The notes under the pieces were generated by a model. The model made no database searches. It was not told the DNA's origin and was given only the letters and a program-made list of their open reading frames with translations. This document shows, in pieces, positions 45,793 through 62,280 of a DNA stretch of 64,000 bases (position 1 is its first letter; each line of letters begins with the position of its first letter). Location of the stretch: positions 124,001-188,000 of the IMG/VR virus record IMGVR_UViG_3300020477_001008, one strand, 5' to 3'. The translations under genes were made by a program, and so were the position numbers.

Positions 45793-46998
45793 ATGGACAC
45801 TACTAATAATAAATTTTTTTGTTTTTATCCCTTTCGTGCGATTGATGTATTAGCAGATTCGTCTGTGGTACCTTGTTGTAGATTTGATGGAAGGCACGAC
45901 AAAAGCTTACAATATGTTAATGATAAAAATTCTATAACTGATGCGTTTAATTCTGATTACTTTAATAACTTAAGAAAAAAAATGTTAGCTGGTGAAAAAG
46001 TTAACGGTTGCTGGAAATGTTATAAAGAAGACGAAGCAGGTATTAAAAGTATGAGGCTTGGCTCTGATGAATTTATGGAGCAAACTACAGATGTAGGATT
46101 AGAATTTGTAGAATTAGAATCAGGTAGGTTTTGTAATTTAAAATGTAGATCGTGTAGCCCAGCAGTTTCAAGTGGATTTCATAATGAAGTTAAGTCTTCA
46201 AAATTTATGGCTGAACATTTTGGAATAGATTTAAACAATGAAATATTAGATCCTGCAAATCAATTAAACAAATCGTTTTTATATATTTCAAAAGAACAAG
46301 CACAGAAAATAAAATATATTAAAGTTACAGGTGGGGAACCTCTATTAAGTGAATATTTTTTAAAGTATATTCAAAATCTTAATGAATGGGGTTTGTCAAA
46401 AAATATCACTTTAGAAATCTATACTAATGCATCTTTTCTACCAAAACAAAAGCTCTCAGATGCGTTAAAACCTTTTAAAAAAATTTACTTGTTTATGAGT
46501 ATTGATGCTATAGGTAAAAAATCTGATTATTTAAGATCAGGTAGCAATTGGACTACAATGGAAAAAGTTGCAAAGCATTGGTATGATTTATCAACACAAA
46601 TGAATATGGAATTAAATGTTAGTACTACAATATCTATCTATAATGTTTTATATCTAAAAGAATTAATTGATTGGATACAACAAACTATTAAAATTTCTTG
46701 GCCAAGTATAAATTTTGTACATAATCCTTCGTATATGTGTGTATCAAGCTTTAATGTTGATATTAGAAATGAAATACTTAATACACTACAAAATACTTGG
46801 GACGAAAAAACATTAACAAGTAGGCAAGCCAGAGAATATAAAAAAATTATAAATTTTGTTGAAAATACTACAGAATCTATACCTCCTCACTATTTTTTTG
46901 AAACTACAGAAACAATAGATAAAATTAGAAATGAAGATTGGAAACAACTATTTCCGGAGTTATACAGCTTATTAAGTAGGTATAAAAACAGTATATAA
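45793..46998 (+). CDS. radical SAM protein with N-terminal twitch domain
   Basis: FCFYPF...PCCRF...GCWKCY; CNLKCRSC; VTGGEPLL; SIDAIG..YLR. Confidence 0.9.
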   Translation: MDTTNNKFFCFYPFRAIDVLADSSVVPCCRFDGRHDKSLQYVNDKNSITDAFNSDYFNNLRKKMLAGEKVNGCWKCYKEDEAGIKSMRLGSDEFMEQTTDVGLEFVELESGRFCNLKCRSCSPAVSSGFHNEVKSSKFMAEHFGIDLNNEILDPANQLNKSFLYISKEQAQKIKYIKVTGGEPLLSEYFLKYIQNLNEWGLSKNITLEIYTNASFLPKQKLSDALKPFKKIYLFMSIDAIGKKSDYLRSGSNWTTMEKVAKHWYDLSTQMNMELNVSTTISIYNVLYLKELIDWIQQTIKISWPSINFVHNPSYMCVSSFNVDIRNEILNTLQNTWDEKTLTSRQAREYKKIINFVENTTESIPPHYFFETTETIDKIRNEDWKQLFPELYSLLSRYKNSI

Positions 46999-48229: not shown

Positions 48230-48269
48230 TTTTTTCTTGTTTTTTCTAAAAATTCGTGTATAATTAACA

Positions 48270-48514: not shown

Positions 48515-48521
48515 TTGTATT

Positions 48522-48800
48522 ATGATAAAAAAAATTAAAGAATTTTGGGTAACAAGTTATAAATCAGATCCGTTTGCATTTATTAATGAAATGGCTTCAA
48601 CTATTCTAATAGTTATAGGATCAGCTATTTTAACGTGGACAGTATTAGATCCAAAGCCAGAAATTTTTATTCCTTTTTATTGGGCTGGTAGTATTGCTGG
48701 ATTTATAGGAGCATATCGTAGAACTCTGCCTTGGGTAATGGTATTGACATTTTGGTTTATAATGTTAAATAGTATTGCACTTTGGAGGTTGTTTTTATAA
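48522..48800 (+). CDS. small integral membrane protein
   Basis: Three hydrophobic segments in 92 aa. Confidence 0.7.
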   Translation: MIKKIKEFWVTSYKSDPFAFINEMASTILIVIGSAILTWTVLDPKPEIFIPFYWAGSIAGFIGAYRRTLPWVMVLTFWFIMLNSIALWRLFL

Positions 48801-49180
48801 TGGCAGAAGTACATAAACATTTGATAATCAGAGCTGAAACTAACAAAACACCAACTGATCCAGCTTGGGCTCATCAGTGGTTAACAAAGTTAGTAAAGAA
48901 AATAGGAATGAAAATTTGTCAAGGTCCTATTACTGCTTATGTTAATGTACCTGGCAATAAAGGATTAACAGGTTTAGTAGTTATTGAAACAAGCCATATT
49001 GCTTTGCATTGTTGGGATGAAGATGAGCCAGGATTGTTACAACTTGATGTTTACACTTGTGGACCGTTAGATGAACAAATTATTTTTAATGAACTAAAAC
49101 AATTTGATCCTGTTTGTGTAGAATACAAATACCTTGATAGAAAAAGAAATTTAAAAGAAATAGATGTCAATAAAAAATAA
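48800..49180 (+). CDS. speD: S-adenosylmethionine decarboxylase proenzyme (SpeD/SpeH-like)
   Basis: HLII.AE, GLTGLVVIETSHIALH.W, LDVYTCG; likely start MAEVH at 48800. Confidence 0.88.
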   Translation: MAEVHKHLIIRAETNKTPTDPAWAHQWLTKLVKKIGMKICQGPITAYVNVPGNKGLTGLVVIETSHIALHCWDEDEPGLLQLDVYTCGPLDEQIIFNELKQFDPVCVEYKYLDRKRNLKEIDVNKK

Positions 49181-49568
49181 AATAGACAATTGGGGAAAAC
49201 AATTATCAGTATTAGAAGGTATAGATAGATTACAATATCTAGTTGACCTAGCAGATAAAGAAACTTCATTGGCTAGTGATAAAAGAATAAATGCAAATAT
49301 GATACCTGGATGTGTATCTCAAATTTGGGTAGATGTTAGATTAGAAGATAATAAAGTTATTGCAGATTATGATTCAGATGCAATGATAACAAAAGGAATT
49401 ACAAGTGTAGTATGTGATTGCTTTACAGGTGCTACAAAAGAAGAAGTTAGCAATATAGTTGTAGAAGACTTTGAAAATTTAAATATTAAGCAATTATTAA
49501 CAGCACAACGACAAAATGGTTTAGGAAACCTGATCAATACAGTCATAAACAAGTCCCAGAAGTTATAA
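49164..49568 (+). CDS. sufE: cysteine desulfuration protein SufE
   Basis: DRLQYLVDL, catalytic IPGCVSQIW, DSDAMITKG and R.NGL. Confidence 0.9.
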   Translation: MSIKNKIDNWGKQLSVLEGIDRLQYLVDLADKETSLASDKRINANMIPGCVSQIWVDVRLEDNKVIADYDSDAMITKGITSVVCDCFTGATKEEVSNIVVEDFENLNIKQLLTAQRQNGLGNLINTVINKSQKL

Positions 49569-49607
49569 TAGTAGTTAAGTTTCTATTAACTACCCTTTAA
49601 ATACAAA

Positions 49608-50069
49608 GTGTCAAGCAGTAAGAGAGGCATAACCGCAATCTTCGTAGCATTAATGTTACTCATTGCAACTATACCTTTGAATCTTCATTCCAAGGCTAGT
49701 GCAAGTTCTGACAATTTTATCATAGATTTTAGAATTAATGTTTCGTATGGATTAGGTTGGCGAGTAGATACTCCAGATCCAATGACAATTATACCAGGTA
49801 AAGAATACAAAGTTAATTTAATGGCAGTAAATGATATGGATTCTACTAAAATTGCTGAAATTATGTATGGGTATTTGCCCCCTGAGTTTGCAAGATATTT
49901 TTTATTAGTAGAATGTTTTTGTTATGATACTATTAAATTAAAAGCAAAAAGAATAATTGAATTGCCAGTTGTTTTTATTATTGATCCAGCTATATTAAAA
50001 GATAGAAAATTTAGGAAAGATAAAAATATAACAATAAGATTCAATTTCTACCCACAGATAAAACGTTGA
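49608..50069 (+). CDS. cytochrome c oxidase copper chaperone CtaG/Cox11-like
   Basis: N-terminal TM anchor, Cu-binding ECFCY motif, LPVVFIIDP; GTG start. Confidence 0.72.
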   Translation: MSSSKRGITAIFVALMLLIATIPLNLHSKASASSDNFIIDFRINVSYGLGWRVDTPDPMTIIPGKEYKVNLMAVNDMDSTKIAEIMYGYLPPEFARYFLLVECFCYDTIKLKAKRIIELPVVFIIDPAILKDRKFRKDKNITIRFNFYPQIKR

Positions 50070-50094
50070 CTAAAACATAATTATATCATATAAT
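50066..50094 (+). promoter_or_regulatory. sigma70 promoter of the rnpB-tRNA-Ser transcript
   Basis: TTGACT(50066-71)-N17-TATAAT(50089-94), RNA starting at about 50101. Confidence 0.8.
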
Positions 50095-50100
50095 AGTTTT

Positions 50101-50260
50101 AATGAGTGTAATCGGACTATCGCTGGTAACAGAGGAAAGTCAGGACACAGGTGGATATGTGCAAGTCCAAATAGAGTGTTAACAACCACCGGGACACAGG
50201 GTAGGACGCAAAGGTAGATGATAGTCTAAAACAGAATCCTGCTTACGGATTATACTCATT
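50101..50260 (+). ncRNA. rnpB: minimal RNase P RNA (about 160 nt)
   Basis: P1 AATGAGTGTAATC/GATTATACTCATT; P2 GGACTATC/GATAGTCT; CR-I GAGGAAAGTC; CR-IV TAGATGAT; CR-V AAACAGAATCCTGCTTA; P4 with bulged U and compensatory CAGG/CCTG. Confidence 0.88.
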
Positions 50261-50268
50261 ACTAACCC

Positions 50269-50358
50269 GGAAGGGTGGCTGAGTGGTTGAAAGCACCGGT
50301 CTTGAAAACCGGCAAAGGCGCAAGTCTTTCGTGAGTTCGAATCTCACCCCTTCCGCCA
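50269..50358 (+). tRNA. tRNA-Ser(TGA)
   Basis: Cloverleaf GGAAGGG...CCCTTCC-G-CCA, anticodon arm CCGGT-CTTGAAA-ACCGG, long variable arm, TTCGAAT. Confidence 0.97.
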
Positions 50359-50380
50359 GTTAAATGAAAGAAAAAGAAAA

Positions 50381-50620
50381 ATGGAAGATAATGATACAAA
50401 ATTAAATGATGCTTATAACGTAATTTTTAAGCAAGTAGAGAAATTAACTAAAGATGGAGTAGAGCCTGTTATTATTGCTGGAACATTATTAGCTCAAGCA
50501 CTTAGGTTATACAGAACAGTATTATCAGAACCAGATTTTGAAAAAATGATGGATAGTGTCTTTGGTAGACTTGATGAAATTGAACCATATGGTCCAACTG
50601 ATAAAACTTTGCTTCACTAA
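50381..50620 (+). CDS. hypothetical protein
   Basis: 79 aa helical ORF. Confidence 0.7.
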   Translation: MEDNDTKLNDAYNVIFKQVEKLTKDGVEPVIIAGTLLAQALRLYRTVLSEPDFEKMMDSVFGRLDEIEPYGPTDKTLLH

Positions 50621-50645
50621 ATATGTATAAAATAGAAATAAAAAT

Positions 50646-51005
50646 ATGACCTATTATGTTAATCAAGCCTGTGTAATGTGTAAACACACCGATTGCGTGG
50701 AAGTTTGTCCAGTAGATTGTTTTTACGAAGGTGAAAATTTTTTAGCAATTAATCCAGATGAATGTATAGACTGTGGAGTTTGTGAACCAGAATGCCCAGT
50801 TGATGCAATTAAACCTGACACACACGATGAACCAGACAAAGACAAATGGATAGAAATTAATAAAAAGTATTCAAGTGGACCAAACAGATGGCCAGTATTA
50901 ACAAAAATGATTGAAGCATTAGAAACAGCAGAAGAATATGCAACTAAAACAGATAAAATAAATTTATTATCAGAAAAACCTGGACCAGGAGATGAAGGAC
51001 GATGA
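50646..51005 (+). CDS. fdxA: 7Fe ferredoxin FdxA ([3Fe-4S]/[4Fe-4S])
   Basis: MTYYV...[43 protein letters not shown]. Confidence 0.95.
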
Positions 51006-52042
51006 GTAAAAAGTTTAGTGAGAAGTGGCGAGAAGAAAAAGAAGCTAAAAAGAAAAAGAAATTAGAAAAAGCTGGAGTTAAGCCTGATCCAGAAGTAGGC
51101 AAAAATCTAGATCAAGTAATGAAAAAACAAATTAAAATTGATCTTAACACTCTTAAAGATAGACATTTATTCATTGCCACACCGGCTTATGGTGGTTTAG
51201 TAGGAGAAGCATATTTAAAAGCTATGGTAAGAGTAGGTATATTGTTTAAACAATACAATTTAAACTTTACACTTTGTACAATAGCAAATGAATCATTAAT
51301 AACCAGAGGTAGAAATACACTGACAGCTATGTTTATGAGTGATCCAAAATTTACTGATATGATGTTTATTGATGCTGACATACATTTTGAAGCAGAATCA
51401 GTTATAAAGTTATGGGCTCATATAAGCAATCCAAATTTACCACAATGTGAAGTTGCCATTGGGGCATATCCAAAGAAAACTATTAATTGGGAACAGATTC
51501 ATAAAGCAGTAAGAGCCGGAGCGTCAGTTGATGATATGACTTTACATCAAGGTTCTTATGTAATGAATATTCGTATGGATAATAAAGGAAGAATACCATT
51601 AACAGATGGATTAATTCCTGTATATGATGGTGGAACTGGATTTATGATATTCAAAAGAGAAGTAATACAAACAATGATGGACAAATGGCCTGACTTGCAT
51701 TATAAAAATGATTTAAATACAAACCCTAAACACGATCCATATATGTTTGCTTTATTTGATACTATTATTGATCCTGATACAAGACGTTATTTGTCTGAAG
51801 ATTATACTTTTTGCAGACGTTATCAAGAAATAGGTGGAACAATTTGGATGGATCCTTCTATTAATTTAGATCATCAAGGAAATTATTTGTTTAAAGGTAA
51901 TATTTCTAATCAGTTTACTTACTCAGGTGAAGCAACACAAGAAGAAATGAAAACTATTAATAAAGAGATGGAACTTAATATAGCACCAACACCAAATGAA
52001 CAAAAACCACAAGGTGAATCAAGTGATGAAACAGAACTCTAA
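51002..52042 (+). CDS. GT-A-fold glycosyltransferase-like protein
   Basis: [23 protein letters not shown] (DxD), GTGFM and SEDYTFC..G..IW.D...H.G. Confidence 0.6.
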
Positions 52043-52277
52043 TACTATAAAAACTGAGATTAGTGAATTAAAGAAAGAAGTTAGAGATCAAGCAATAATT
52101 ACTAGAAGAACAATCGTAAAAACATATCAAAAAAATGAAGAAGATAGTTTAAGAAGTAAAGTAGCAAGGCAAGAAAAGAAATTAAAGCAAGAACAATACT
52201 TACGTAGAAAATATCCATCGGTAAATGAAGCATACAAACATTATTTGATGACAATGAAGTTAGTAAAATCAAAATAA
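51996..52277 (+). CDS. hypothetical basic coiled-coil protein
   Basis: RRKYPSVNEAYKHY; true start probably 52026 (MKQN). Confidence 0.6.
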   Translation: MNKNHKVNQVMKQNSNTIKTEISELKKEVRDQAIITRRTIVKTYQKNEEDSLRSKVARQEKKLKQEQYLRRKYPSVNEAYKHYLMTMKLVKSK

Positions 52278-52637
52278 ATGACAAATTGGCATAACGTAAA
52301 CGACCTTTATATAGTTTGTAATAAAAAAATAGCAAACGTACCAAAGAAGAAAGCAACAATTGATTGGGTTGGAATAGATTGTGTATATAAAATTAAAATT
52401 AATAACAAAGTAGTACACGTTGGTAGGTCTGATACTTGTAAGAAACACGGTGGTGCCGAAAAAACTAGAAAAGCTTTAGTTCAATTAATGGGTTGGGAAA
52501 CAAAAAACCCTGGAATTACAACAACAAAGCTTTGGGAAAGCATTAAAAAAACCTATAAACCAAAAATTGGCGATATTAAAATTGGAATTATAGCGACAAA
52601 CAACATAGAAAAAGTGTATAATAAAGAAGCAATATGA
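52278..52637 (+). CDS. hypothetical protein, possibly GIY-YIG-like
   Basis: CVYKI...HVGRS resembles a degenerate GIY-YIG motif. Confidence 0.4.
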   Translation: MTNWHNVNDLYIVCNKKIANVPKKKATIDWVGIDCVYKIKINNKVVHVGRSDTCKKHGGAEKTRKALVQLMGWETKNPGITTTKLWESIKKTYKPKIGDIKIGIIATNNIEKVYNKEAI

Positions 52638-53038
52638 TATTTAGAAGTAACAAAGATCACTTATTACACGAAGTTTTTAAAGGCTTAAATACTTTTGTAG
52701 AGAAAACTATGTTTAAGCAATACGAAAACGATACCCTAAAATCATTAGAATACCTAACTACAAAAACAGGCGAATTAAAACTAGAATATAAAGAATTAAT
52801 GGCTTGTTGGAAATGGTATAACATTGATCGTCCTAAAAGAGAAGCTAAAAATGATTTAGGCAATAGTATGATGTACTATGAGCAAGATACAAAAATGTTA
52901 GCAAGGGCGGTAGCATTAAGAAAATTTTCACAAAAACTTTTTAAAGGAGGAGATTATGAACCAAGAATCGGGACTTTTCAAGCGACACGCAAATCTGTCA
53001 CAAAAGGTAGAAATGTTGGAAAAGGAGAGACAGCATAA
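52634..53038 (+). CDS. hypothetical protein
   Basis: 134 aa; 3' end overlaps a 59-aa ORF. Confidence 0.6.
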   Translation: MIFRSNKDHLLHEVFKGLNTFVEKTMFKQYENDTLKSLEYLTTKTGELKLEYKELMACWKWYNIDRPKREAKNDLGNSMMYYEQDTKMLARAVALRKFSQKLFKGGDYEPRIGTFQATRKSVTKGRNVGKGETA

Positions 53039-53135
53039 TAGAACTTTTCAGCATAAAGCTGAACTACTACAACTTAAAAAAGAAAAATTGAAAATAAAAG
53101 AACAAATAGAAAGATTAAAAACAAGAACAAATTAG
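52956..53135 (+). CDS. YdcH/DUF465-like small coiled-coil protein (not in the ORF track)
   Basis: SD AAGGAGG; MNQESGLFKRHANLSQKVEMLEKER...ELLQLKKEKLKIKEQIERL; stop abuts the next ATG. Confidence 0.7.
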   Translation: MNQESGLFKRHANLSQKVEMLEKERQHNRTFQHKAELLQLKKEKLKIKEQIERLKTRTN

Positions 53136-53136
53136 T

Positions 53137-53562
53137 ATGTACGAATATAGATGTAAAATATTAAAAATCATTGACGGGGATACTGTTGATGTTGATATAG
53201 ATTTAGGTTTTGGAGTATGGATGCACAAGGAACGTGTTAGATTGTTTGGCATTGATACTCCTGAGTCTAGGACTAGAGATAAAGAAGAAAAGAAATACGG
53301 TTTACTATCCAAAAAATTTATACAAGAAAGATATCCAGTAGGATCAAATGCAATATTAATAACGCATAAAGACGCAACTGGAAAGTTTGGACGTATATTG
53401 GGTGAGCTAAAATATAATAATACTACAATTAATAAGAAAATGATACTTGAAGGTTATGCAGTTGCTTATCACGGACAATCAAAAGAAGATGTTGAAGCAG
53501 AACATTTAAAAAATAGAAAAAAGTTGGATAAAAAAATAAGCAAATTTACTAAAGTAAAATGA
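53137..53562 (+). CDS. thermonuclease (SNase-like)
   Basis: IIDGDTVDV.IDLGF, RVRLFGIDTPESRT, GKFGRILG and GYAV.Y.G. Confidence 0.92.
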   Translation: MYEYRCKILKIIDGDTVDVDIDLGFGVWMHKERVRLFGIDTPESRTRDKEEKKYGLLSKKFIQERYPVGSNAILITHKDATGKFGRILGELKYNNTTINKKMILEGYAVAYHGQSKEDVEAEHLKNRKKLDKKISKFTKVK

Positions 53563-53795
53563 GATTAGATCTTCACGGATTTACAGTACACGATGCTTGG
53601 AAAAAATTTAGTGTATGGATTCAAGACGCACAAACAAAGGAAAATGTTAAATCTGTTACAATAGTAACAGGCCAAGGAGAAATCCATAAAGAACTTCCTC
53701 GATGGTGTGATAATATGAATTTTATTAGACAAATACAACCACACTTTCATAATGGTGCTTACCAAATTTATTTTTACAAAAACAGACGTGAATAG
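53559..53795 (+). CDS. stand-alone Smr-domain protein (putative mRNA endonuclease)
   Basis: LDLHG (DxH) and IVTGQG (GxG) Smr signature motifs; 78 aa. Confidence 0.82.
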   Translation: MRLDLHGFTVHDAWKKFSVWIQDAQTKENVKSVTIVTGQGEIHKELPRWCDNMNFIRQIQPHFHNGAYQIYFYKNRRE

Positions 53796-53796
53796 A

Positions 53797-53825
53797 TTGA
53801 CAAAAATTGGATTGTATAGTATATT
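53797..53825 (+). promoter_or_regulatory. sigma70 promoter of queD
   Basis: TTGACA(53797-802)-N17-TATATT(53820-25). Confidence 0.75.
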
Positions 53826-53831
53826 AAACAA

Positions 53832-53882
53832 TGAGGACTTAACGTCAACCCTCTTTAAAAATTCTGCCGTCAATATAAGGAG
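53832..53882 (+). ncRNA. candidate preQ1-I riboswitch
   Basis: GAGG...ACCCTC stem followed by an A-rich TTTAAAAA tail at the predicted +1, upstream of queD; loop CTTA can pair with TAAG of the SD region. Confidence 0.5.
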
Positions 53883-53887
53883 AAAAT

Positions 53888-54352
53888 ATGGGTAAACATT
53901 TTAGTACAAAACATTACGGACATAATATTGGGTTGAGTGCAGTTTTTAGACAACCAAACGCAGACCATTCACATTGTCATTTTTTACACGGATATAGTTT
54001 AGCATTTACATTTACATTTGGTTGTGATGAGTTAGATAATAAAAATTGGGCAGTTGATTTTGGAGGACTAAAACCTTTAAAAAAATGGCTTGAAGACTCA
54101 TTTGATCATAAACTTTGCTTGGATAAAAACGATCCACATCTAGAAAAATTTAAAGAATTAGAAGCAATGGATCTTGCACAGATTAGAATTTTTGATGGTG
54201 TTGGAGCAGAAAAATTTGCCGAACACGCCTTTAATTTTGCAGATAATTTAATTAAAGAAGCAACAAATAATCGTTGTTATGTAGTAAAAGTAGAATGTGC
54301 AGAACACGGAGCCAATTCGGCAATATATCAAATAACTGAAAAAAACCTATAA
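53888..54352 (+). CDS. queD: 6-carboxy-5,6,7,8-tetrahydropterin synthase QueD
   Basis: FRQ..AD.SHC.FLHGY, W.VDFGGLK, FDHK, GAEKFAE and ECAEHGANSAIY. Confidence 0.9.
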   Translation: MGKHFSTKHYGHNIGLSAVFRQPNADHSHCHFLHGYSLAFTFTFGCDELDNKNWAVDFGGLKPLKKWLEDSFDHKLCLDKNDPHLEKFKELEAMDLAQIRIFDGVGAEKFAEHAFNFADNLIKEATNNRCYVVKVECAEHGANSAIYQITEKNL

Positions 54353-54360
54353 ATAGTTAT

Positions 54361-56058
54361 ATGTTATTAACTTTGCTAACATTATTGTCAGCATTATCTA
54401 TAAGTGCGGTAGCGATCTTCTATTCTATAGCAGGTCTGGCCGCGATATTTGCCGGTGCGGCTGTTCCTATTATGATAATGGGTACTGTTTTAGAAGTAGG
54501 TAAATTAGTTACCGCTTCTTGGCTATATCAGAATTGGAAGAAGTCACCATTCTTTTTAAAGTTCTATCTCACGATCGCAGTAGTAGTTTTAATGTTTATA
54601 ACGTCTATGGGTATCTTTGGTTTCTTATCTAAAGCACACGTAGAACAAACAGCACCGTCGACACTTATTACACAAAAGATAGAACAGATAGATGAAAGAC
54701 TAGTTCGTGAAAATGCTAAAGTAGAAAGATTTACATTAGATTTAGAAAGATTAAACACAGGTACTAACGTAAGAATAGATACATTAGTAGATACAGAACA
54801 AGGCAAATTAGATTCAATTTATTCACGTATTGATAAAGAGATTGCTGATATTACAGCAATTGCTAATACAAGTATTAATACGCAAAAAGAAAGAATAACT
54901 CAAGCTAAAGAAAGAGCTGATAGAGATATTGCACAATTAAATGAAGCTAGAGCAAAAACTTGGGGTAAGAAAAGAATTGATGATGAAATAGCAAAGATTA
55001 GAGATAATGAATTAGCTGTGGCGGCCGCGGCACAAAAAGAAATAATAAAAATACAAGAAAAATTAAATGTTGATATACAAGCTATTAAAGACAAATATCA
55101 AGCTAGTATTGATGCTATTACAACCAATGTAACAAAGTTAACAGGCGAAGCTGAAGCTACAACAGGTGAAATAGAAGTCAAAGCAGATGAACTTGAAGGA
55201 AAACTTACAGTTGTATATGCTAATATTGATGATTTAAATGAAGAAAAATTTGTACTACAATCACAAATTAAAGAGATAGAAGTTGAAGTAGGACCAATAA
55301 AATACATAGCAGAATTTGTATATGGTATGGAAGCAGATGCTGATCTATTAGAAAAATCAGTTAGATGGGTTATTATTATAATTATATTTGTATTTGATCC
55401 ACTTGCAGTATTATTATTGATTGCGGCAAACTTCTCTTTAAAAAGAAGATTTGGTAGTGATATGGAAGAAATGGTTGAAGCCAAATTTGGTGGCGGAAAA
55501 TTAGATGACTATTGGAAAGATAGATATCAAGATATGAAAGAAGATCTTTCAAGATTTAATAAACAAAAAGAACACCAAGATACTACACAAGAAGAACATT
55601 CAGTTAGTGCCTCATATAATTTAGGTGAAGTTAATGTTGATAATACTGATCAATCAGTTGAAGATTATTTAGATGAAGTACAATATGATATAGATCCTAA
55701 AGAATTTGAAGGTGTAGAAGAAAACGATTTAGGTCATCCAAATTATGATTTAATTAAAGATGAAGAAACAGGTAAAAAGAAATATTGGGAAGACCAAAAT
55801 AAAGAAGAACAGCTAGAAAGATTTAAACAGCGAGAAGAAGAAGAAAAACAAGCACTAGAAGAATATTCACGTAAAGCTAGGGAAGAAGATGGCTTTGATC
55901 CAGATGAAGTTGAAGGATATGAAGAATTTAATAAAAATTACGAGAATAAAGAAGATGACGAATCAGTTAGTATTGCTGAAGATGAAGTAACGCCAACTAT
56001 AATTGAAGATGTTAAGATTACAGATCTATCCGATGAGGATGTTAAAAAAAAGACTTAA
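54361..56058 (+). CDS. membrane protein with long periplasmic coiled coil and acidic tail
   Basis: N-terminal TMs (SIAGLAAIFAG..., GIFGFLSKAH), coiled coil, VGPIKY, IIFVFDPLAVLLLIAAN; ends just after A_AAA_AAG. Confidence 0.8.
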   Translation: MLLTLLTLLSALSISAVAIFYSIAGLAAIFAGAAVPIMIMGTVLEVGKLVTASWLYQNWKKSPFFLKFYLTIAVVVLMFITSMGIFGFLSKAHVEQTAPSTLITQKIEQIDERLVRENAKVERFTLDLERLNTGTNVRIDTLVDTEQGKLDSIYSRIDKEIADITAIANTSINTQKERITQAKERADRDIAQLNEARAKTWGKKRIDDEIAKIRDNELAVAAAAQKEIIKIQEKLNVDIQAIKDKYQASIDAITTNVTKLTGEAEATTGEIEVKADELEGKLTVVYANIDDLNEEKFVLQSQIKEIEVEVGPIKYIAEFVYGMEADADLLEKSVRWVIIIIIFVFDPLAVLLLIAANFSLKRRFGSDMEEMVEAKFGGGKLDDYWKDRYQDMKEDLSRFNKQKEHQDTTQEEHSVSASYNLGEVNVDNTDQSVEDYLDEVQYDIDPKEFEGVEENDLGHPNYDLIKDEETGKKKYWEDQNKEEQLERFKQREEEEKQALEEYSRKAREEDGFDPDEVEGYEEFNKNYENKEDDESVSIAEDEVTPTIIEDVKITDLSDEDVKKKT

Positions 56059-56264
56059 AAACCAGGAAAGAGAGAATAAAAAAAATTGACATCAACGATG
56101 AAATTAGTGTACAATTAAAAGAAGTAAAAAAAACTATTGATATGGAAGGCATTAATCAAAGAACTCAAAAAACACTGGCACTCAATCACGGAGCAAAAGG
56201 TGAGACAGTAATATCCAAGGCTGACAAAGAATGGTTAGATCAGAAATCAGATAATAATAAATGA
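56046..56264 (+). other. -1 frame extension of the 54361 gene (72 open codons) or small ORF 56142..56264
   Basis: Frame open from 56046 to TGA 56262-64, overlapping the clpX ATG. Confidence 0.45.
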
Positions 56265-57553
56265 GCGATAAAGAGATTAAAATGAAATGCTCGTTCTGTG
56301 AAAAGACTAGAGCCGAATCACATAAATTAATAGCAGGACCTAAAGAAACATTTATTTGCGATGAATGTGTAAAACTTTGCCACGATATTTTAAAAGAAGG
56401 AACAATTGAAAACGAAACAAAAGAGTTTGCTATTCCTGATCCAAAAAAATTACACGGATATTTAAATGAACACGTAATTGGTCAAGATAGAGCAAAGAAA
56501 ATTGTTAGTGTAGCAGTTTATAACCATTATAAAAGAATTGTTAATAATTTAATTAAAGAAGATGGGCAAGACGAAATTGAAAAATCTAATGTTATGATGT
56601 TAGGACCATCAGGTGTTGGAAAAACACTTTTAGCTAAAAAGGTTGCTGAATACGTAAATGTACCATTTGCTATTGCTGATGCAACAACAATAACAGAATC
56701 AGGTTATGTAGGTGATGACGTAGAGAATATTGTAACAAGATTATTGCAACAAGCAGACTTTAATGTTGAAAAAGCTGAACGTGGAATTATATACATTGAT
56801 GAAATAGATAAAAAAGCAAAAAAAGGTGAGAACGTATCAATTACTAGAGATGTATCTGGTGAAGGTGTACAACAAGCTTTATTAAAAATTATTGAAGGAA
56901 CAACTGTTAGAGTTCCGCCACAAGGTGGAAGAAAACATCCTGGTGCAGAAATGATTGAAGTTGATACATCAAATATATTGTTTATAGTTGGTGGAGCATT
57001 TGTTGGTATAGATAAAGTTATTAATAAAAGGGCTAATAAGTCAGCAGGTATTGGATTTAATCAACGAGTAGAAACTGTTGATACAGGATTTGATGAATGC
57101 GAACCAGATGATTTAATTAAGTATGGATTAATACCTGAACTTGTTGGAAGGTTACCAGTTATAGTAGGTTGTCATAATTTAGATAAAAAAGATTTAAAAG
57201 CAATTATGCTTGATGTAAAAAATTCATTGATTAAACAATCTCAACGTTTATTTAAAATGGAAAATGTAAATTTAATTATAACTGAAGATGCAGTAGATTA
57301 TGTAGTAGATGAAGCACACGAAAAGAAATTAGGTGCTAGAGGATTAAAATCTGTGTTAGAAAAAGGTTTATTAGAAATACAATATGACTTACCAGAATAC
57401 AGAGATGGTGGAGTTAGTGAAATTACAGTTACAGAAAAAACGCTCAAAGGAGAAAAACCGATGCTCACTTATGAGTTTGATGCTAAAGATATAAAAGCTA
57501 AAGAAACAAAAAAAGGGAAAAAGGAAGATAACGGTACAACAGGAAAAGAATGA
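56261..57553 (+). CDS. clpX: ATP-dependent Clp protease ATP-binding subunit ClpX
   Basis: Zn domain CSFC...ICDEC; Walker A GPSGVGKT; pore loop GYVG; IDEIDK; RDVSGEGVQ; RKH loop; IGF loop (AGIGF). Confidence 0.97.
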
Positions 57554-58104
57554 AACAAAGATATAGTAATTACGAGTATCAAAAAAAGAAAGCATTAATT
57601 AACGAGAATATTAGAAGTAAAGAAGTTCGTTTAATATTAGAATCATCACAAGAAATAGTAACTACACAAGAAGCATTAAGATTATCTAGAGAGCAAGATT
57701 TAGATCTAGTTTGTGTTAGCACAAAATCAAATCCACCTATATGTAAAATTATGGATTATGGGAAACATCTATATGAACAAAAAAAGAAACAAAAAATTGC
57801 TGATAAAAAACAAAGAGAAGCTATTGTGGATACAAAAGAAATCCAGTTTAGACCAGCAACTGGAATTGGAGATCTTAAAGTAAAAGCTAAAAAGGTACAA
57901 GAGTTTATAGATGATGGAGATAAGGTAAAATTAGTAATGAAATTGCGTGGCAGGGAAAATGCTATGAAGGATTTTGCTATGGAACAATTCAAAAAATTTG
58001 TTGATTTAATTGAGAATTATGACTACGATTATAGGCCAAATATACAGGGAAATAAAATACTTGCAATTTTAAAGAAAGGTGTTATAATAAAGAACAATGA
58101 GTGA
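57550..58104 (+). CDS. infC: translation initiation factor IF3
   Basis: INENIR..EVRLI, DLDLV.VS....[28 protein letters not shown]....RGRE. Confidence 0.95.
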
Positions 58105-58453
58105 TAAACCAAGGAAAAAATACGACATCAAAAATTTCTCTAATTTTGGGAAATTTGAGCAAAAGCGAGATCGAAGACCAAGACGTGAGCCAGATCCACC
58201 TGGTTTAGCAGTTACAGTTCACGGCGACGATGTAATGAAAGCTTATAGAAGGCTTAAAAAGAAACTAATGAAAGATAACCTTATGGATACAATAAGGGAT
58301 AAAAGATATTACAAAAAGCCAAGTGAAATTAGACAAGAAAAATTAAAAGTGCAAAGAAGGAATATGCAAAAAGCTCAAAGAGATAGAGCTATGCAATATG
58401 GTATAAGATATAAAAACTATGATCCTAGCACAGCCAAAACACGTGGCTATTAA
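58097..58453 (+). CDS. rpsU: 30S ribosomal protein bS21 with N- and C-terminal extensions
   Basis: VTVHGDDVMKAYRRLKKKL...RYYKKPSE.R core; own promoter TTGCAA-N16-TGn-TATAAT-N8-ATG. Confidence 0.85.
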   Translation: MSDKPRKKYDIKNFSNFGKFEQKRDRRPRREPDPPGLAVTVHGDDVMKAYRRLKKKLMKDNLMDTIRDKRYYKKPSEIRQEKLKVQRRNMQKAQRDRAMQYGIRYKNYDPSTAKTRGY

Positions 58454-58779
58454 TGTTCGACCAAATAAAGTTTCATCAGCACCCCACAGAGAATAAAGGC
58501 AAACAAGCTATAATAGATTTTGTAGATTACAAAATGAGTATAGTATGCTCACCTACATCTTATGGTGGAGATAAAGGTTTGTTTGAAATTGCAGTATTTG
58601 ATAAAGCTGGAGAGTTTGTTGATTTAAAAGGTATTAGTGATAAAGATGATCAAGTACACGGTTGGTTAAGAGAAGATGAAGTTGTATTAGTAATAGAAAA
58701 ATTGTGTGAAATAACAGATATGGATGTTAGATTAGTTTTATTGCGTTCAGCATTTAGGGAGAACAAAAATGATAGATGA
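58453..58779 (+). CDS. hypothetical phage protein
   Basis: SYGG..GLFEIAV...V.GWL pattern. Confidence 0.7.
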   Translation: MFDQIKFHQHPTENKGKQAIIDFVDYKMSIVCSPTSYGGDKGLFEIAVFDKAGEFVDLKGISDKDDQVHGWLREDEVVLVIEKLCEITDMDVRLVLLRSAFRENKNDR

Positions 58780-58921
58780 ACTTGTAGAACAAATAGCTAG
58801 AATGAACAAAGACGAAAGAAATGAATTTGTTGAAACTCTAGTTAAAAAATGGCCTGATTTATCAGAGTCAATTTATTTTTTATTAAATGTAAATTTAATG
58901 GAGAAGGAGAACATTAAATAG
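58769..58921 (+). CDS. small hypothetical protein (50 aa, not in the ORF track)
   Basis: SD AGGGAG; MIDELVEQIARMNKDERNEFVETLVKKWPDL... Confidence 0.55.
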   Translation: MIDELVEQIARMNKDERNEFVETLVKKWPDLSESIYFLLNVNLMEKENIK

Positions 58922-58934
58922 ATGTTTAATTCAA

Positions 58935-59010
58935 GGGCGGTTAGCTCAGTTGGTAGAGCATCTCGTTTACACCGAGGGGGTCAAAGGTTCGAGTCCTTTA
59001 CTGCCCACCA
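58935..59010 (+). tRNA. tRNA-Val(TAC)
   Basis: GGGCGGT...ACTGCCC-A-CCA; anticodon loop TTTACAC; TTCGAGT. Confidence 0.97.
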
Positions 59011-59014
59011 TTAC

Positions 59015-59090
59015 GGAGTATTAGTGTAGCGGTTAACACGTCGCCCTGTCACGGCGAAGACCACGGGTTCGAATCCCGTATACTCCGCCA
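59015..59090 (+). tRNA. tRNA-Asp(GTC)
   Basis: GGAGTAT...ATACTCC-G-CCA; anticodon arm TCGCC-CTGTCAC-GGCGA. Confidence 0.97.
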
Positions 59091-59108
59091 TCAACAATAA
59101 ATATTATT

Positions 59109-60314
59109 ATGCACAATATTCGAAAACAATTTCCCATATTTGATAAAACATTACCTAACGGTAAAAAATTAGTATATTTAGATAGTGCTAATTCTTCACA
59201 AAAACCGAAAAGGGTATTAGATAGATTATATGATTTTTATGCACAAGAATATAGTAGTGTTGGGAGAAGTATACACCAGTTAAGTACAGGTGCAAGTAAA
59301 TGTTTAAATGATAGTAGAGAAGCAGTTGCAAAATTTTTAAATGCTGGTTCTGTAGATGAAATTGTTTTTACTAAAAGTGCCACAGAAGCTATTAATACGA
59401 TTGCAGAAAGTTTTGGCAGAACTCAACGTGATCATTATGAAATAATTTGTTCTGAATTAGAACATAATTCAAATTATCTTCCTTGGCATTTGCAAAGAGC
59501 TCATAAAAATGCAACAATTAAATTTATTCCTTTAAAAGATGATTATACATTAGATGTAGATAAGCTAGAAAGTTTAATTACTAAAAAAACTAAAATGATA
59601 GCAATAACTCATTTATCAAATGTTACTGGAGAAGTAATTAATGTTAAAAAAATATGTGAGATAGCACACAGTAAAGGAATAGCAGTTTTTGTAGATGGTA
59701 CACAAGGTGCACCACATATGAAAGTTGATGTACAAGATATTGATTGTGATTTTTATTGTATTAGTGGTCATAAAATGTACGGACCTTCAGGCGTTGGGGC
59801 TTTGTACGCCAAAGAAAAATGGTTAGATGAATTATCGCCTTTTCAAGGTGGTGGTGGAACGGTACTTGATGCAACGCAAAGTGTTATTCAATATGCAGAT
59901 GGACCAAAAAAATGGGAAGCTGGAACACACCCAGTTGCTGAAATTGTAGCATTAAAAGAAGCAATTGATTTTTATTATGATGTTGGATTTGATAATATGT
60001 TAAATCACGAAAAACAATTAGTTGAGTATTTGTATGAAAAATTAGCATCTGATAATGATATTGAGTTACTATGTGGTAATAAGCCTAATGCTGTTTTATC
60101 ATTTAATATTAAAGGAATACATCACGAAGATATGTCAATGTTTTTAGATGAATATGGTATTGCTACAAGACCAGGTCAACATTGTGCTATGTTATTCCAT
60201 AAAAGGTACAGTTTAACTGGTTCTGTTAGAGTATCATTAGGTGTATATAATACCAAAGAAGAAATGGACTTTTTCTTACAGTCTTTGGGTGAAATTAAGA
60301 AGAGATTATCCTAA
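59109..60314 (+). CDS. sufS: SufS-type cysteine desulfurase
   Basis: VYLDSA.SSQKP, ELEHNSN, PLP lysine SGHKMYGP, catalytic RPGQHCA, R.SLG.YNT.EE. Confidence 0.93.
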   Translation: MHNIRKQFPIFDKTLPNGKKLVYLDSANSSQKPKRVLDRLYDFYAQEYSSVGRSIHQLSTGASKCLNDSREAVAKFLNAGSVDEIVFTKSATEAINTIAESFGRTQRDHYEIICSELEHNSNYLPWHLQRAHKNATIKFIPLKDDYTLDVDKLESLITKKTKMIAITHLSNVTGEVINVKKICEIAHSKGIAVFVDGTQGAPHMKVDVQDIDCDFYCISGHKMYGPSGVGALYAKEKWLDELSPFQGGGGTVLDATQSVIQYADGPKKWEAGTHPVAEIVALKEAIDFYYDVGFDNMLNHEKQLVEYLYEKLASDNDIELLCGNKPNAVLSFNIKGIHHEDMSMFLDEYGIATRPGQHCAMLFHKRYSLTGSVRVSLGVYNTKEEMDFFLQSLGEIKKRLS

Positions 60315-60319
60315 TCCTA

Positions 60320-60367
60320 TTGACTTCCTGATAAGTATTTTATATAATACTGATGTACAATTAAATA
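60320..60367 (+). promoter_or_regulatory. tandem sigma70 and late promoters for rplL-sufB
   Basis: TTGACT(60320-25)-N17-TATAAT(60343-48); TAAATA 60362-67; SD AAGGA. Confidence 0.7.
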
Positions 60368-60385
60368 TAATTAATAAGGAAAACT

Positions 60386-60856
60386 ATGTCAGAAGATGAA
60401 GTAAAAAAAGCTGAAGAAACAAAGGCAGAAGAAAAGCCAGTAGAACCAAAAGCTGAAGAAACATCTAAAACTATTACAAGAAATTTAGATGCTATTGTTG
60501 AAGAACTTGGACAATTAACAGTTATGGAAGCGGCCGATCTTGCTAAAAAATTAGCTAAAGCTTGGGATATTGATTTAGATAATATGGCGGCCGGTGTTGC
60601 ACCAGCAGGTGGTGGCGCCGCGGGAGCTCCAGCAGACGCAGATGCTCCTGTAACAGTTATATTAAAAGATTTTAAAGAAGGTACTAAAATTAATGTCTTA
60701 AAAGCAATTAAGGCAATTAAAGGTTTAGGACTAATGGAATCTAAACAATTTGTAGAAGCATTACCTAAAGAAGTTGATTCAGAAATACCAAGAGATAAAG
60801 CAGAAGAAATTAAAAAACAATTGGAAGAAGTTGGCGGTAACGTTGAAATAAAATAA
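60386..60856 (+). CDS. rplL: 50S ribosomal protein bL12 (L7/L12) with N-terminal extension
   Basis: [16 protein letters not shown], Ala/Gly hinge, [34 protein letters not shown]. Confidence 0.95.
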
Positions 60857-62280
60857 TGTTAGATGAGCATAAGGTAGGAAAAGATTATAAAGAAGGCTTT
60901 ACTACGGACATTGAAGCCTATACACTACCCCCTGGTCTAAATGAAGACGTTATTAAAAAGATATCAAGTTTTAAAAAAGAACCACAATGGCTTTTAGACT
61001 GGAGACTAAAAGCTTATAAGGTTTGGCTGAATATGAAACAGCCTGAGTGGGCAAAGTTAGATATTAAGCCAATTGACTATCAAGCAATATCATATTATTC
61101 AACACCTAATCCTAAATTAAAATCTTTAGATGAATTAGATCCTAAAATTTTAGAAACATATAATAAGTTAGGTATTCCATTACACGAACAAAAAGCATTA
61201 GCAGGTGTGGCCGTTGATGCAGTATTTGATTCTGTATCTGTAGCTACAACGTACAAAGCAGATTTAGAAAAACAAGGTATACTTTTTTGTAGCTTTAGTG
61301 AAGCAGTAGAAAAATATCCAGAAATAGTTAAAAAATATTTAGGTAGTGTAGTACCACAAGGTGATAATTTTTTTGCTTGTTTAAATTCAGCTGTATTTAC
61401 AGATGGTTCATTTGCTTATATTCCTAAAGGAGTTAGATGTCCTATGGAACTATCAACTTATTTTAGAATAAATGCGGCCAACACAGGACAATTTGAAAGA
61501 ACATTAATTATATGTGAAGATGATGCATACGTATCTTATCTAGAAGGATGTACAGCACCAATGCGTGATGAAAATCAATTACACGCCGCGGTAGTTGAAT
61601 TAGTAGCAAAAGAAAATGCAGAGATAAAATATTCAACAATACAAAATTGGTATCCAGGAGATGAAGATGGAAAAGGTGGTGTATATAATTTTGTAACTAA
61701 ACGTGGTAAATGTCAAGGACGTAAAAGTAAAATATCTTGGACACAATTAGAAACAGGTTCAGCATTAACTTGGAAGTATCCTTCTTGTGTATTAATGGGA
61801 GATTATTCAGTAGGAGAGTTTTATTCAGTAGCAGTATCAACAGGTAAACAACAAGCTGATACAGGAACTAAAATGATACATTTAGGAAAACATACAAAAT
61901 CAACAGTTATATCAAAAGGTATTTCAGCAAAACAAGGAAAGCAAACTTATAGAGGATTAGTATCAATGGGTGGTAATGCTAAAAAATCACAAAACTATAC
62001 TCAATGTGATTCGTTGCTTCTTGGAGATAAGTGTTCAGCACTTACTATACCTTATATTAAAAGTAAAACAAAATCTTCTAAATGCGAACACGAAGCGTCA
62101 ACATCAAAAGTATCTGATGAACAATTATTTTATTTAAGACAACGTGGACTTAAAGAAGAAGATGCTGTGAACTTAATTGTAAATGGTTTTGTAAAAGAAG
62201 TAACTAAACAGTTACCAATGGAGTTTGCAGTTGAGGCCAATAAACTTTTATCAGTAACATTAGAAGGATCAGTAGGATAA
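60856..62280 (+). CDS. sufB: Fe-S cluster assembly scaffold SufB
   Basis: [55 protein letters not shown] and CEHEASTSK. Confidence 0.97.

What the first reader, a model, noticed from the sequence alone, without database searches (positions are those of the whole stretch)
49164..62280. Dispersed viral SUF Fe-S biogenesis set (SufE, SufS, SufB) plus ferredoxin
Seen: SufE with its catalytic Cys (49164), a 7Fe FdxA (50646), SufS with intact K and C motifs under a late-type promoter (59109), and SufB (60856). SufC and SufD are not in the window. Inference: the phage boosts Fe-S supply for its radical-SAM enzymes (three here), or supplies sulfur for tRNA thiolation. A SufB working without SufC/D, or with host partners, would be unusual.
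Basis: partly seen in the sequence, partly recalled or inferred. Interest (0 to 1): 0.6.

Follow-up and report, generated by a model that had tools for sequence, protein, structure and literature searches.

The report
Complete SUF Fe-S pathway in jumbo phage
A large marine bacteriophage carries, scattered around its genome, an apparently complete set of genes for building iron-sulfur clusters, including a half-size SufD, probably to supply the 22 or more radical-SAM enzymes it also encodes.

Summary
The four genes are real, intact and at the stated coordinates: SufE (Cys50), 7Fe FdxA, SufS (Lys222, Cys359) and SufB (all E. coli tunnel and cluster-site residues kept). The DNA is phage, not host. 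The window also holds tail sheath, tube, large terminase and ribonucleotide reductase, and a complete 328-kb relative with terminal repeats carries the same dispersed set.

About 34 kb before the window lie SufC and a 198-aa "mini-SufD" that keeps the Cys/His cluster ligands. About 8 kb after it lie an Nfu carrier, SufT and ClpP. The 242-kb contig has 23 radical-SAM hits, and 22 of 22 mapped ORFs carry CX3CX2C.

Seventy-two IMG/VR contigs carry related SufB. More distant jumbo phages keep a contiguous sufB-C-D-S-T cluster with full-length SufD. This lineage has scattered the genes, halved SufD, and holds a SufS that groups with SAR11.

All Suf genes are under purifying selection (dN/dS 0.07-0.39). 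RNA-library contigs match L12 and SufB exactly.

The "late promoter" before SufS is not supported: two tRNA genes lie there.

I found no paper describing a virus-encoded SufBCD scaffold. I rate this a new variant of a known kind.

The parts
49164..49568 (+). SufE, sulfur acceptor for SufS (134 aa). Catalytic Cys50.
   Evidence: Pfam SufE 95 bits. Aligns to E. coli SufE 22-133 with Cys51 matched. Below the NCBIfam equivalog cut-off, 68 against 160. dN/dS 0.39 against viral relatives.
50646..51005 (+). FdxA-type 7Fe ferredoxin (119 aa). An Fe-S client and a possible electron donor.
   Evidence: NF045490 145 against cut-off 135. dN/dS 0.07-0.15.
   Evidence: ARAGORN, Rfam tRNA, sequence.
59109..60314 (+). 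SufS, type II cysteine desulfurase (401 aa). PLP Lys222, persulfide Cys359.
   Evidence: TIGR01979 scores 467 against cut-off 475. Groups with Pelagibacterales SufS at 100/99 support. dN/dS 0.13 against L006.
60320..60348 (+). Sigma-70-like promoter match (TTGACT-17-TATAAT, 11 of 12) between SufS and L12-SufB.
   Evidence: This is a consensus match only, and such matches are not enriched in the region.
60386..60856 (+). Ribosomal protein L7/L12 homologue. Its stop overlaps the SufB start, so the two are probably co-transcribed.
   Evidence: Pfam. Same L12-SufB order in L006. Exact RNA-library contigs on w60358-60871.
60856..62280 (+). SufB scaffold subunit (474 aa). Keeps C232, Q263, W265, K282, C384 and E411-H412-E413, which match E. 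coli C254, Q285, W287, K303, C405 and E432-H433-E434. Its partners lie OUTSIDE the window and so cannot be listed as parts: SufC at contig 89431-90129 (-), mini-SufD at contig 88866-89462 (-), Nfu carrier at contig 195812-196372 (+), SufT at contig 196369-196674 (+). Window base 1 is contig base 124001.
   Evidence: SufB. It lies in a 52-row all-viral starred set, has dN/dS 0.12, and exact RNA-library contigs lie on w61109-61890. Partners outside the window: SufC; mini-SufD; Nfu; SufT.
10802..12121 (+). Radical-SAM enzyme (CX3CX2C at residue 137), a probable client.
12166..13290 (+). Radical-SAM/SPASM enzyme, a probable client.
45793..46998 (+). Radical-SAM enzyme with an N-terminal SPASM domain, a probable client.

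Best explanation
The window is part of a marine jumbo myophage. It is a 242.6-kb fragment of a genome of about 330 kb. The host is probably a SAR11-like alphaproteobacterium.

The phage encodes its own complete but scattered SUF pathway. The inferred mechanism, taken from the E. coli SUF system, runs as follows:
1. SufS (PLP Lys222, Cys359) takes sulfur from cysteine and passes it as a persulfide to SufE Cys50.
2. SufE passes it to SufB Cys232.
3. Sulfur travels through the conserved SufB tunnel to a cluster site at the SufB / mini-SufD interface (SufB C384 and E411-H412-E413; SufD C154 and H156).
4. The SufC ATPase drives assembly.
5. The finished clusters go through the Nfu carrier and SufT to apo-proteins.

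The main clients are most likely the phage's own 22 or more radical-SAM enzymes, several of which also carry SPASM auxiliary-cluster domains, together with FdxA. FdxA may in turn supply electrons.

Shown here: gene identities, intact catalytic residues, viral origin, conservation and purifying selection across a phage lineage, and presence in RNA libraries for L12 and SufB. Inferred: that the proteins assemble and work as in E. coli, and that phage enzymes rather than host enzymes are the main clients.
For: Gene identities and residues.

Phage context: sheath, tube, TerL, helicases and RNR are in the same window. The nearest TerL relatives are PA5oct, Atu_ph07 and Rak2-type jumbo phages. GC is uniform.

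Relatives: the complete relative G003 has terminal repeats and shares 209 of 292 ORFs. It carries SufS, SufB, SufC, mini-SufD, SufE, SufT and FdxA, all dispersed. Seventy-two IMG/VR contigs carry SufB at 62-89% identity, and many also carry SufC, D, S, E or T. An intermediate gene order is seen in L202.

Selection: dN/dS is 0.07-0.39.

Mini-SufD: its length of 188-198 aa is conserved in this lineage, against 396-528 aa in bacteria. The family has about 55 clusters. SufB / mini-SufD binding is supported by the model: ipSAE 0.78 in three runs against a best control of 0.00. That mark was reached by 51 of 78 solved complexes and 2 of 108 mismatched pairs. The runs agree in 100% of their contacts and the partner pLDDT is 85-86. 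Because SufBCD has been solved, the pass may come from memory.

Demand side: 23 Radical_SAM hits, with 22 of 22 mapped ORFs carrying CX3CX2C. G003 has 22 hits and G001 has 11.

Expression hint: exact RNA-library contigs lie on L12 and SufB in three runs from two studies.

Host: an alpha-type permuted tmRNA, and SufS grouping with 11 Pelagibacterales at 100/99 support under a mixture model.
Against: - No biochemical or infection data exist.
- The RNA evidence comes from assembled contigs in RNA libraries, which can contain DNA. None lay on SufS.
- Mini-SufD lacks about 225 N-terminal residues and scores below the SufD equivalog cut-off, so the scaffold may differ from SufBC2D.
- SufE, SufT and SufS also fall under NCBIfam equivalog or subfamily cut-offs.
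- No A-type carrier or IscU was found in this fragment.
- No iron donor has been identified.
- The client assignment rests only on co-occurrence.
- Host assignment is indirect: SufS is only 42-52% identical to SAR11 SufS.
Confidence: 0.6

Rival explanations
1. The set mainly supports the host. The phage SUF proteins keep the host's own Fe-S proteome working (respiration, central metabolism) under iron limitation or oxidative stress during a long jumbo-phage infection, rather than serving phage enzymes. This is not exclusive of the best explanation.
For: SUF is the stress-adapted Fe-S pathway in bacteria (established knowledge). Single viral Fe-S genes such as sufE, sufA, iscU and nifU have been read this way in marine viromes (PMC8940887; PMC5332604). 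The phage also carries many other host-like housekeeping genes: ClpX, ClpP, ClpS, DnaK, HSP20, IF3, S21, L12, L33 and a tmRNA.
Against: SUF co-occurs with unusually many phage radical-SAM genes in three related genomes. The Nfu-SufT pair lies about 2 kb before a dense radical-SAM array.
Confidence: 0.25
2. SufS and SufE serve sulfur trafficking, for tRNA or DNA thiolation or for thio-cofactors, rather than Fe-S assembly.
For: Cysteine desulfurases feed several sulfur pathways (established knowledge). The phage carries tRNAs and a QueD/QueC-like set.
Against: A full scaffold, carrier and SufT are present. Scans for MnmA (PF03054) and TtcA/TilS (PF01171) found only NadE and a QueC-like PP-loop protein. 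ThiI, TusA and Dnd families were not scanned, and the contig is a fragment.
Confidence: 0.06
3. The block is host DNA misassembled into a viral contig, or the contig is cellular.
For: The genes are host-like, and bacterial SufB proteins reach 67-72% identity.
Against: Structural and packaging genes are in the same window. GC is uniform. A closed relative with terminal repeats carries the same genes. The same local order occurs in the independent contig L006. Logan contigs from another sample bridge tRNA-Asp to SufS, L12 and SufB, and SufB to Aldedh. SufB, SufC and SufT fall in viral-only clades.
Confidence: 0.01
4. The genes are decaying relics without function. In particular, the short SufD is a truncated pseudogene.
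For: SufD is half-length and falls below family cut-offs.
Against: The short length is conserved in more than 50 protein clusters and more than 12 viral contigs. dN/dS is 0.28-0.34. The ligand residues are kept. The SufB interface is predicted with confidence. All other catalytic residues are intact.
Confidence: 0.03

Closest known systems
E. coli SufABCDSE pathway and the SufBC2D scaffold (PDB 5AWF)
   Same: SufB is about 62% identical and keeps all tunnel and cluster-site residues. SufC meets the equivalog cut-off. SufS is type II with SufE as acceptor. The SufD Cys358/His360 equivalents are kept.
   Different: The genes are spread over about 107 kb on both strands instead of forming one operon. 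SufD is 198 aa rather than 423 aa and lacks the N-terminal domain and roughly half of the beta-helix. SufB lacks the E. coli N-terminal CxxCxxxC insert. No SufA was found in this fragment. Nfu and SufT are present. The set is encoded by a virus.
Marine viral Fe-S auxiliary genes (sufA/A-type carrier, iscU, sufE, nifU, paaD), for example the 183-kb T4-like environmental genome with 12 radical-SAM genes (PMC5332604)
   Same: Marine phages combine Fe-S assembly genes with many radical-SAM genes, and the same supply rationale has been proposed.
   Different: Those genomes carry carriers or single accessory genes only. Here the whole core machine is viral (SufS, SufE, SufB, SufC, SufD), along with Nfu and SufT, and there are 22 or more radical-SAM genes.
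More distant jumbo phages of the same TerL clade, for example the 340-kb IMG/VR record G001 (locus L044)
   Same: TerL is 54-56% identical. They carry SufB, SufC, SufD, SufS, SufT, ClpS and HSP20, and G001 has 11 radical-SAM hits.
   Different: There the genes form one contiguous cluster with full-length SufD (384-431 aa). They have a very divergent SufS (about 30% identity), and no SufE was found.
Minimal archaeal SufB2C2 / SmsCB scaffolds (PMC12584684; PDB 9H7Y)
   Same: They show that reduced SufBD-family scaffolds can work (abstract; weak matches).
   Different: Those systems lack SufD altogether and use one 316-aa SufBD protein. The phage keeps a full SufB plus a separate half-size SufD.
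Microcystis phage MaAM05 (MW495066), sufB-C-D-S-iscU at the end of the record
   Same: It is the best SufB match among deposited phage records, at 64% identity.
   Different: It has a contiguous sufBCDSU block next to panB and panC at the very end of a linear record. Whether that block is viral was not tested here. Its SufS is only about 40% identical.

Membership tests
SUF Fe-S assembly system | SufB with the sulfur-acceptor Cys, the tunnel residues and the cluster-site Cys/Glu/His | tested here: met
   C232, Q263, W265, K282, C384 and E411-H412-E413 align to E. coli C254, Q285, W287, K303, C405 and E432-434. NF008773 scores 856 against cut-off 717.
SUF Fe-S assembly system | SufC ABC-type ATPase | tested here: met
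   TIGR01978 scores 245 against cut-off 213. The motifs are visible in the translation.
SUF Fe-S assembly system | Full-length SufD (about 420 aa) with the His360 ligand | tested here: inconclusive
   The C358 and H360 equivalents are kept and the SufB interface is predicted. However, the protein is 198 aa and TIGR01981 scores 134.5 against cut-off 222.
SUF Fe-S assembly system | Type II cysteine desulfurase SufS with PLP Lys and catalytic Cys, plus the SufE acceptor Cys | tested here: met
   Lys222 and Cys359; SufE Cys50. SufS is 8 bits under the TIGR01979 cut-off, and SufE is under its equivalog cut-off though above Pfam's.
SUF Fe-S assembly system | Genes organised as one suf operon | tested here: not met
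   The genes lie at contig 88.9-90.1 kb (minus strand), 173.2, 183.1-186.3 and 195.8-196.7 kb.
SUF Fe-S assembly system | Cluster assembly and transfer activity | not testable with these tools
   This needs biochemistry or complementation.
FdxA-type 7Fe ferredoxin | A [3Fe-4S] plus [4Fe-4S] cysteine pattern and the C-terminal DUF3470 extension | tested here: met
Virus-encoded auxiliary metabolic gene | Lies on a contig with viral hallmark genes, conserved in related viral genomes, not a host flank | tested here: met
Pelagiphage (phage of SAR11) | Demonstrated or strongly inferred SAR11 host | tested here: inconclusive
   Evidence in favour: an alpha-type tmRNA, SufS grouping with Pelagibacterales, G003 SufB beside a Pelagibacteraceae SufB, and 32% GC. 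There is no CRISPR spacer, single-cell or culture link.

The most novel reading that the evidence does not exclude
A lineage of marine jumbo phages runs a self-contained Fe-S factory: SufS/E, then SufB-SufC with a half-size SufD, then Nfu/SufT. This factory is dedicated to maturing the phage's own two dozen radical-SAM enzymes inside a streamlined SAR11-type host. It would be the first complete virus-encoded Fe-S assembly pathway. The mini-SufD would define a new minimal architecture for the SufBCD scaffold.
Probability: 0.4. Interest if true: 0.8.

Novelty: new variant of a known kind. Interest (0 to 1): 0.66.

Why it matters
Viral Fe-S genes have so far been described as single accessory pieces (sufA, iscU, sufE, nifU, paaD) that must plug into host machinery. 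Here a virus carries the whole core machine and the downstream carriers, and the set is conserved across a widespread ocean phage lineage. This suggests cofactor supply can limit large phages that bring many Fe-S enzymes into small, iron-poor hosts.

The naturally halved SufD keeps only the SufB-facing part and the Cys/His ligands. It offers a ready-made test of which parts of SufD the scaffold needs.

The gene orders seen in relatives run from contiguous, through partly split, to fully scattered, with one component (SufS) of separate origin. This gives a worked example of how an acquired operon is dismantled and rebuilt inside a phage genome.

Tried and rejected
- **Late promoter before SufS:** rejected.
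- **SufA/IscA (PF01521) and IscU/NifU_N (PF01592):** no match in the 242-kb contig. The contig is a fragment, and the complete relative G003 does have an A-type carrier.
- **tRNA thiolation enzymes:** PF03054 and PF01171 gave only short PP-loop matches, which turned out to be NadE and a QueC-like protein.
- **SufE in a Pelagibacteraceae single-cell genome:** not found with this query. That genome is incomplete, so this says little.
- **Deposited phage records:** most SufB and SufS matches are ends of prophage-like or unannotated records. They were not treated as evidence for viral SUF.
- **Literature:** eight searches found no paper describing a virus-encoded SufBCD scaffold. The marine jumbo-phage paper and a 2026 jumbo-phage review mention neither Fe-S, suf nor radical SAM. 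The library is limited, so this does not prove the finding is unpublished.
- They are now named in the SufB part and in the text.
- **Sigma-70 promoter scan:** matches are not enriched (62 against 80 expected). The 11-of-12 matches in intergenic gaps are only suggestive.


Full report
**1. Observation**

The window is bases 124001-188000 of a single 242,646-base IMG/VR virus record. The record is linear and CheckV puts it at 55% complete.

- SufE (w49164-49568) matches Pfam SufE at 95 bits. Its Cys50 aligns with the catalytic Cys51 of E. coli SufE.
- The ferredoxin (w50646-51005) passes the NCBIfam FdxA equivalog cut-off (145 against 135). It shows the 7Fe cysteine pattern.
- SufS (w59109-60314) aligns end to end with solved type II desulfurases. 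It keeps the PLP lysine (Lys222, in SGHK) and the persulfide cysteine (Cys359, in RPGQHCA).
- SufB (w60856-62280) is about 62% identical to E. coli SufB. It keeps the equivalents of C254, Q285, W287, K303, C405 and E432-H433-E434. It lacks only the dispensable N-terminal CxxCxxxC insert.

The one detail that fails is the 'late-type promoter' before SufS. The upstream 175 bases are tRNA-Val and tRNA-Asp genes. The only similar string is AATAAATA, ending 5 bases before the ATG. TATAAATA is not enriched in the window.

**2. It is phage DNA**

The same window encodes a 1011-aa tail sheath, a tail tube, a large terminase, helicases and a class I ribonucleotide reductase. The nearest terminases are those of the jumbo phages PA5oct, Atu_ph07, Phosso and the Rak2 group, at 45-54% identity. 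GC is flat at 0.29-0.38.

A related IMG/VR record, G003, is 328,149 bases with direct terminal repeats and is rated complete. Its TerL is 73% identical. It shares 209 of 292 ORFs with this contig at a mean identity of 56%, and it carries the same Suf genes, also dispersed.

An independent contig (L006) has the identical local order: FdxA ... ClpX-IF3-S21 ... SufS-L12-SufB. Logan contigs from another marine sample bridge the tRNA-SufS-L12-SufB junctions and the SufB-Aldedh junction. Host misassembly is therefore excluded.

**3. The rest of the pathway**

- SufC (232 aa, above the TIGR01978 cut-off) and a short SufD (198 aa) lie as an overlapping pair on the minus strand at contig 88,866-90,129. 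That is about 34 kb before the window.
- About 8 kb after the window lie an Nfu-type carrier (Nfu_N plus NifU domains, CSGC motif), SufT/DUF59 with its conserved Cys, and ClpP, at contig 195,812-197,293.
- No A-type carrier or IscU was found. The contig is a fragment, and the complete relative G003 does have an A-type carrier.

The phage therefore encodes SufS, SufE, SufB, SufC, SufD, Nfu and SufT. 'SufB without SufC/D' is an artefact of the window edge.

**4. The mini-SufD**

The short SufD aligns to E. coli SufD residues 263-397, and to about 225-397 in the family profile. It keeps the Cys358 and His360 equivalents (C154, H156).

Its length is not an accident. In all 80 bacterial loci examined SufD is 396-528 aa, and in the more distant phage group it is 384-431 aa. 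In this phage's lineage it is 188-198 aa in more than ten contigs. The word-index search, limited to proteins of 109-346 aa, found about 55 clusters of 184-213 aa at 52-93% identity. All came from marine metagenome sources, on contigs up to 328 kb. dN/dS against relatives is 0.28-0.34.

A complex prediction of SufB with mini-SufD scored ipSAE 0.78 in three runs against a best control of 0.00. That mark was reached by 51 of 78 solved complexes and 2 of 108 mismatched pairs. The runs agree in 100% of their contacts, and the partner pLDDT is 85-86. The interface (SufB 386-418, SufD 132-162) holds the cluster ligands. Because SufBCD has been solved, this shows likeness to that complex, not proof of binding.

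A 199-aa SufD next to a SufC also occurs at 37% identity on a contig from a different metagenome (JGI sample 3300005201) whose gene context is unclear. Short SufDs may therefore not be strictly viral.

**5. Demand side**

The contig has 23 Radical_SAM matches, 17 of them above Pfam's cut-off. All 22 ORFs I could map carry a canonical CX3CX2C motif. Several also carry SPASM auxiliary-cluster domains, some of them N-terminal. Twelve sit in a dense array at contig 198.8-215.6 kb and a thirteenth at 218.9-220.1 kb. The array starts about 2 kb after Nfu-SufT-ClpP.

G003 has 22 matches and the more distant G001 has 11. For comparison, the richest published case I found is a 183-kb T4-like environmental genome with 12 radical-SAM genes plus an A-type carrier and PaaD (PMC5332604).

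**6. Evolution**

Seventy-two IMG/VR contigs encode SufB at 62-89% identity. In a 138-row tree, 52 of 58 viral SufB proteins lie on one side of a well-supported branch, apart from the 80 best bacterial SufB proteins (a quick LG+G4 tree). SufC and SufT likewise fall in almost purely viral sets.

Three stages of gene order can be seen:
- The more distant phages (for example G001: 340 kb, 39% GC, TerL 54-56% identical) keep a contiguous HSP20-ClpS-SufB-SufC-SufD-SufS-SufT cluster.
- A 138-kb contig (L202) is intermediate. It has ClpS-SufB, then eleven unrelated genes, then SufC, mini-SufD, SufS, SufE and SufT.
- This phage and G003 have the genes fully scattered.

SufS has a different history. 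The SufS of this phage, L006, L010 and G003 forms a clade that groups with 11 Pelagibacterales sequences at 100/99 support under an LG+C20 mixture model. Identity to SAR11 SufS is only 42-52%. The SufS of the distant phage group is about 30% identical to this one.

The simplest reading has four steps: an old capture of a suf operon by a jumbo-phage ancestor, then dispersal, then halving of SufD, then replacement of the sulfur-donor module by a SAR11-type SufS, with SufE present alongside it. The order of these events is inferred, not shown.

**7. Host**

Three indirect lines point to an alphaproteobacterial, probably SAR11-like, host:
- the SufS affinity;
- an Alphaproteobacteria-type permuted tmRNA in the window (RF01849, 153 bits);
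- G003's SufB lying beside a Pelagibacteraceae SufB.

The 32% GC content fits as well. There is no direct link.

**8. Expression**

The stretch occurs in marine metagenomes from at least 11 studies. Contigs from three metatranscriptome libraries (two studies) match L12 (w60358-60871) and SufB (w61109-61890) without mismatch. None lay on SufS.

Contigs from RNA libraries can derive from DNA and cannot show strand or level, so this is a hint only. A sigma-70-like match (11 of 12 positions) lies just before L12-SufB, but such matches are not enriched in the region.

**9. Mechanism and rivals**

I take the pathway to work as in E. coli: SufS to SufE, to SufB Cys232, to the SufB/SufD interface with SufC driving assembly, then Nfu/SufT, then apo-proteins. 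The phage radical-SAM/SPASM enzymes and FdxA are the main clients.

The main rival is general support of the host Fe-S proteome. It is compatible with the phage's many other housekeeping genes and is not exclusive of the best explanation. Sulfur supply for thiolation finds no partner enzymes in the two families scanned. Relic and misassembly readings are contradicted by selection, conservation and synteny.

**10. Novelty**

Single viral Fe-S genes are well known. I found no report of a virus-encoded SufBCD scaffold or of a complete viral SUF pathway. The jumbo-phage literature I could read does not mention it.

The components are ordinary family members. What is new is their completeness in a virus, the scattered and mosaic layout, the conserved half-size SufD, and the pairing with 22 or more radical-SAM genes. 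I therefore rate this a new variant of a known kind, with moderately high interest.

Noticed in passing
window 48221-48557 (+): The phage encodes an Alphaproteobacteria-type permuted (two-piece) tmRNA with tag ADENLALAA (Rfam RF01849, 153 bits). This is a host clue, and a tmRNA is an unusual gene for a phage.
   Followed up: partly
window 18165-20686 (+): An AdoCbl-II (B12) riboswitch (85 bits) lies directly upstream of a DUF6580 protein and a 622-aa TonB-dependent receptor (Plug plus beta-barrel). This looks like a phage-borne, riboswitch-controlled B12 uptake unit. A MotA/ExbB-like protein and an SbmA/BacA transporter lie at contig 192.7-195.8 kb.
   Followed up: partly
window 56261-60856, plus contig 111091-111294: A cluster of translation and proteostasis genes: ClpX, IF3, ribosomal S21, tRNA-Val, tRNA-Asp and L7/L12. 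Elsewhere on the contig are L33, tRNA-Ser, HSP20, DnaK (630 aa), ClpS and ClpP.
   Followed up: partly
contig 198815-220054 (beyond the window's end; locus L085 12815 to L086 16054): A dense array of paralogous radical-SAM ORFs of about 360-520 aa: twelve Pfam hits at contig 198.8-215.6 kb and one more at 218.9-220.1 kb. All mapped ones carry CX3CX2C (often CNLKCRMC). Some have a SPASM domain at the N-terminus, before the radical-SAM core. Their substrates are unknown.
   Followed up: partly
window 48782-50069 and 62506-63876: Other host-like metabolic genes flank the Suf genes: S-adenosylmethionine decarboxylase, the copper chaperone CtaG/Cox11 right after SufE, and an aldehyde dehydrogenase close to L-piperidine-6-carboxylate dehydrogenase (691 bits against a cut-off of 730).
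   Followed up: no
window 13298, 20687, 38750, 46994, 54348 (+): TATAAATA is under-represented overall (6 found against 15 expected). Yet five of the six copies are on the coding strand 5-19 bases (mostly 5-8) before a start codon, at tight gene junctions, three of them overlapping the previous stop codon. Its meaning is unclear.
   Followed up: no
G003 (locus L063) 65079-66482: In the complete relative, SufB does not fall in the viral SufB clade. It lies beside a Pelagibacteraceae SufB (SH-aLRT 98 in a quick tree). This suggests a second, more recent replacement by a host copy.
   Followed up: partly
window 53888-54352; contig 99975-100721 and 26394-27149: QueD/PTPS-like and QueC-like genes, possibly for 7-deazaguanine chemistry, and an NAD synthase (NadE).
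   Followed up: no
contig 57689-69874 (-), locus L081 3689-15874: A single ORF of about 4,060 aa. I did not examine it.
   Followed up: no
L004 (MW495066 255798-273876): The last 10 kb of the Microcystis phage MaAM05 record reads panB, panC, sufB, sufC, sufD, sufS, iscU. This is a bacterial-looking block at the end of a linear record. Whether it is truly viral deserves a check.
   Followed up: no
window 47007-47291: A PAAR-motif protein (94 aa), probably a tail-spike tip, lies just after a radical-SAM gene.
   Followed up: no
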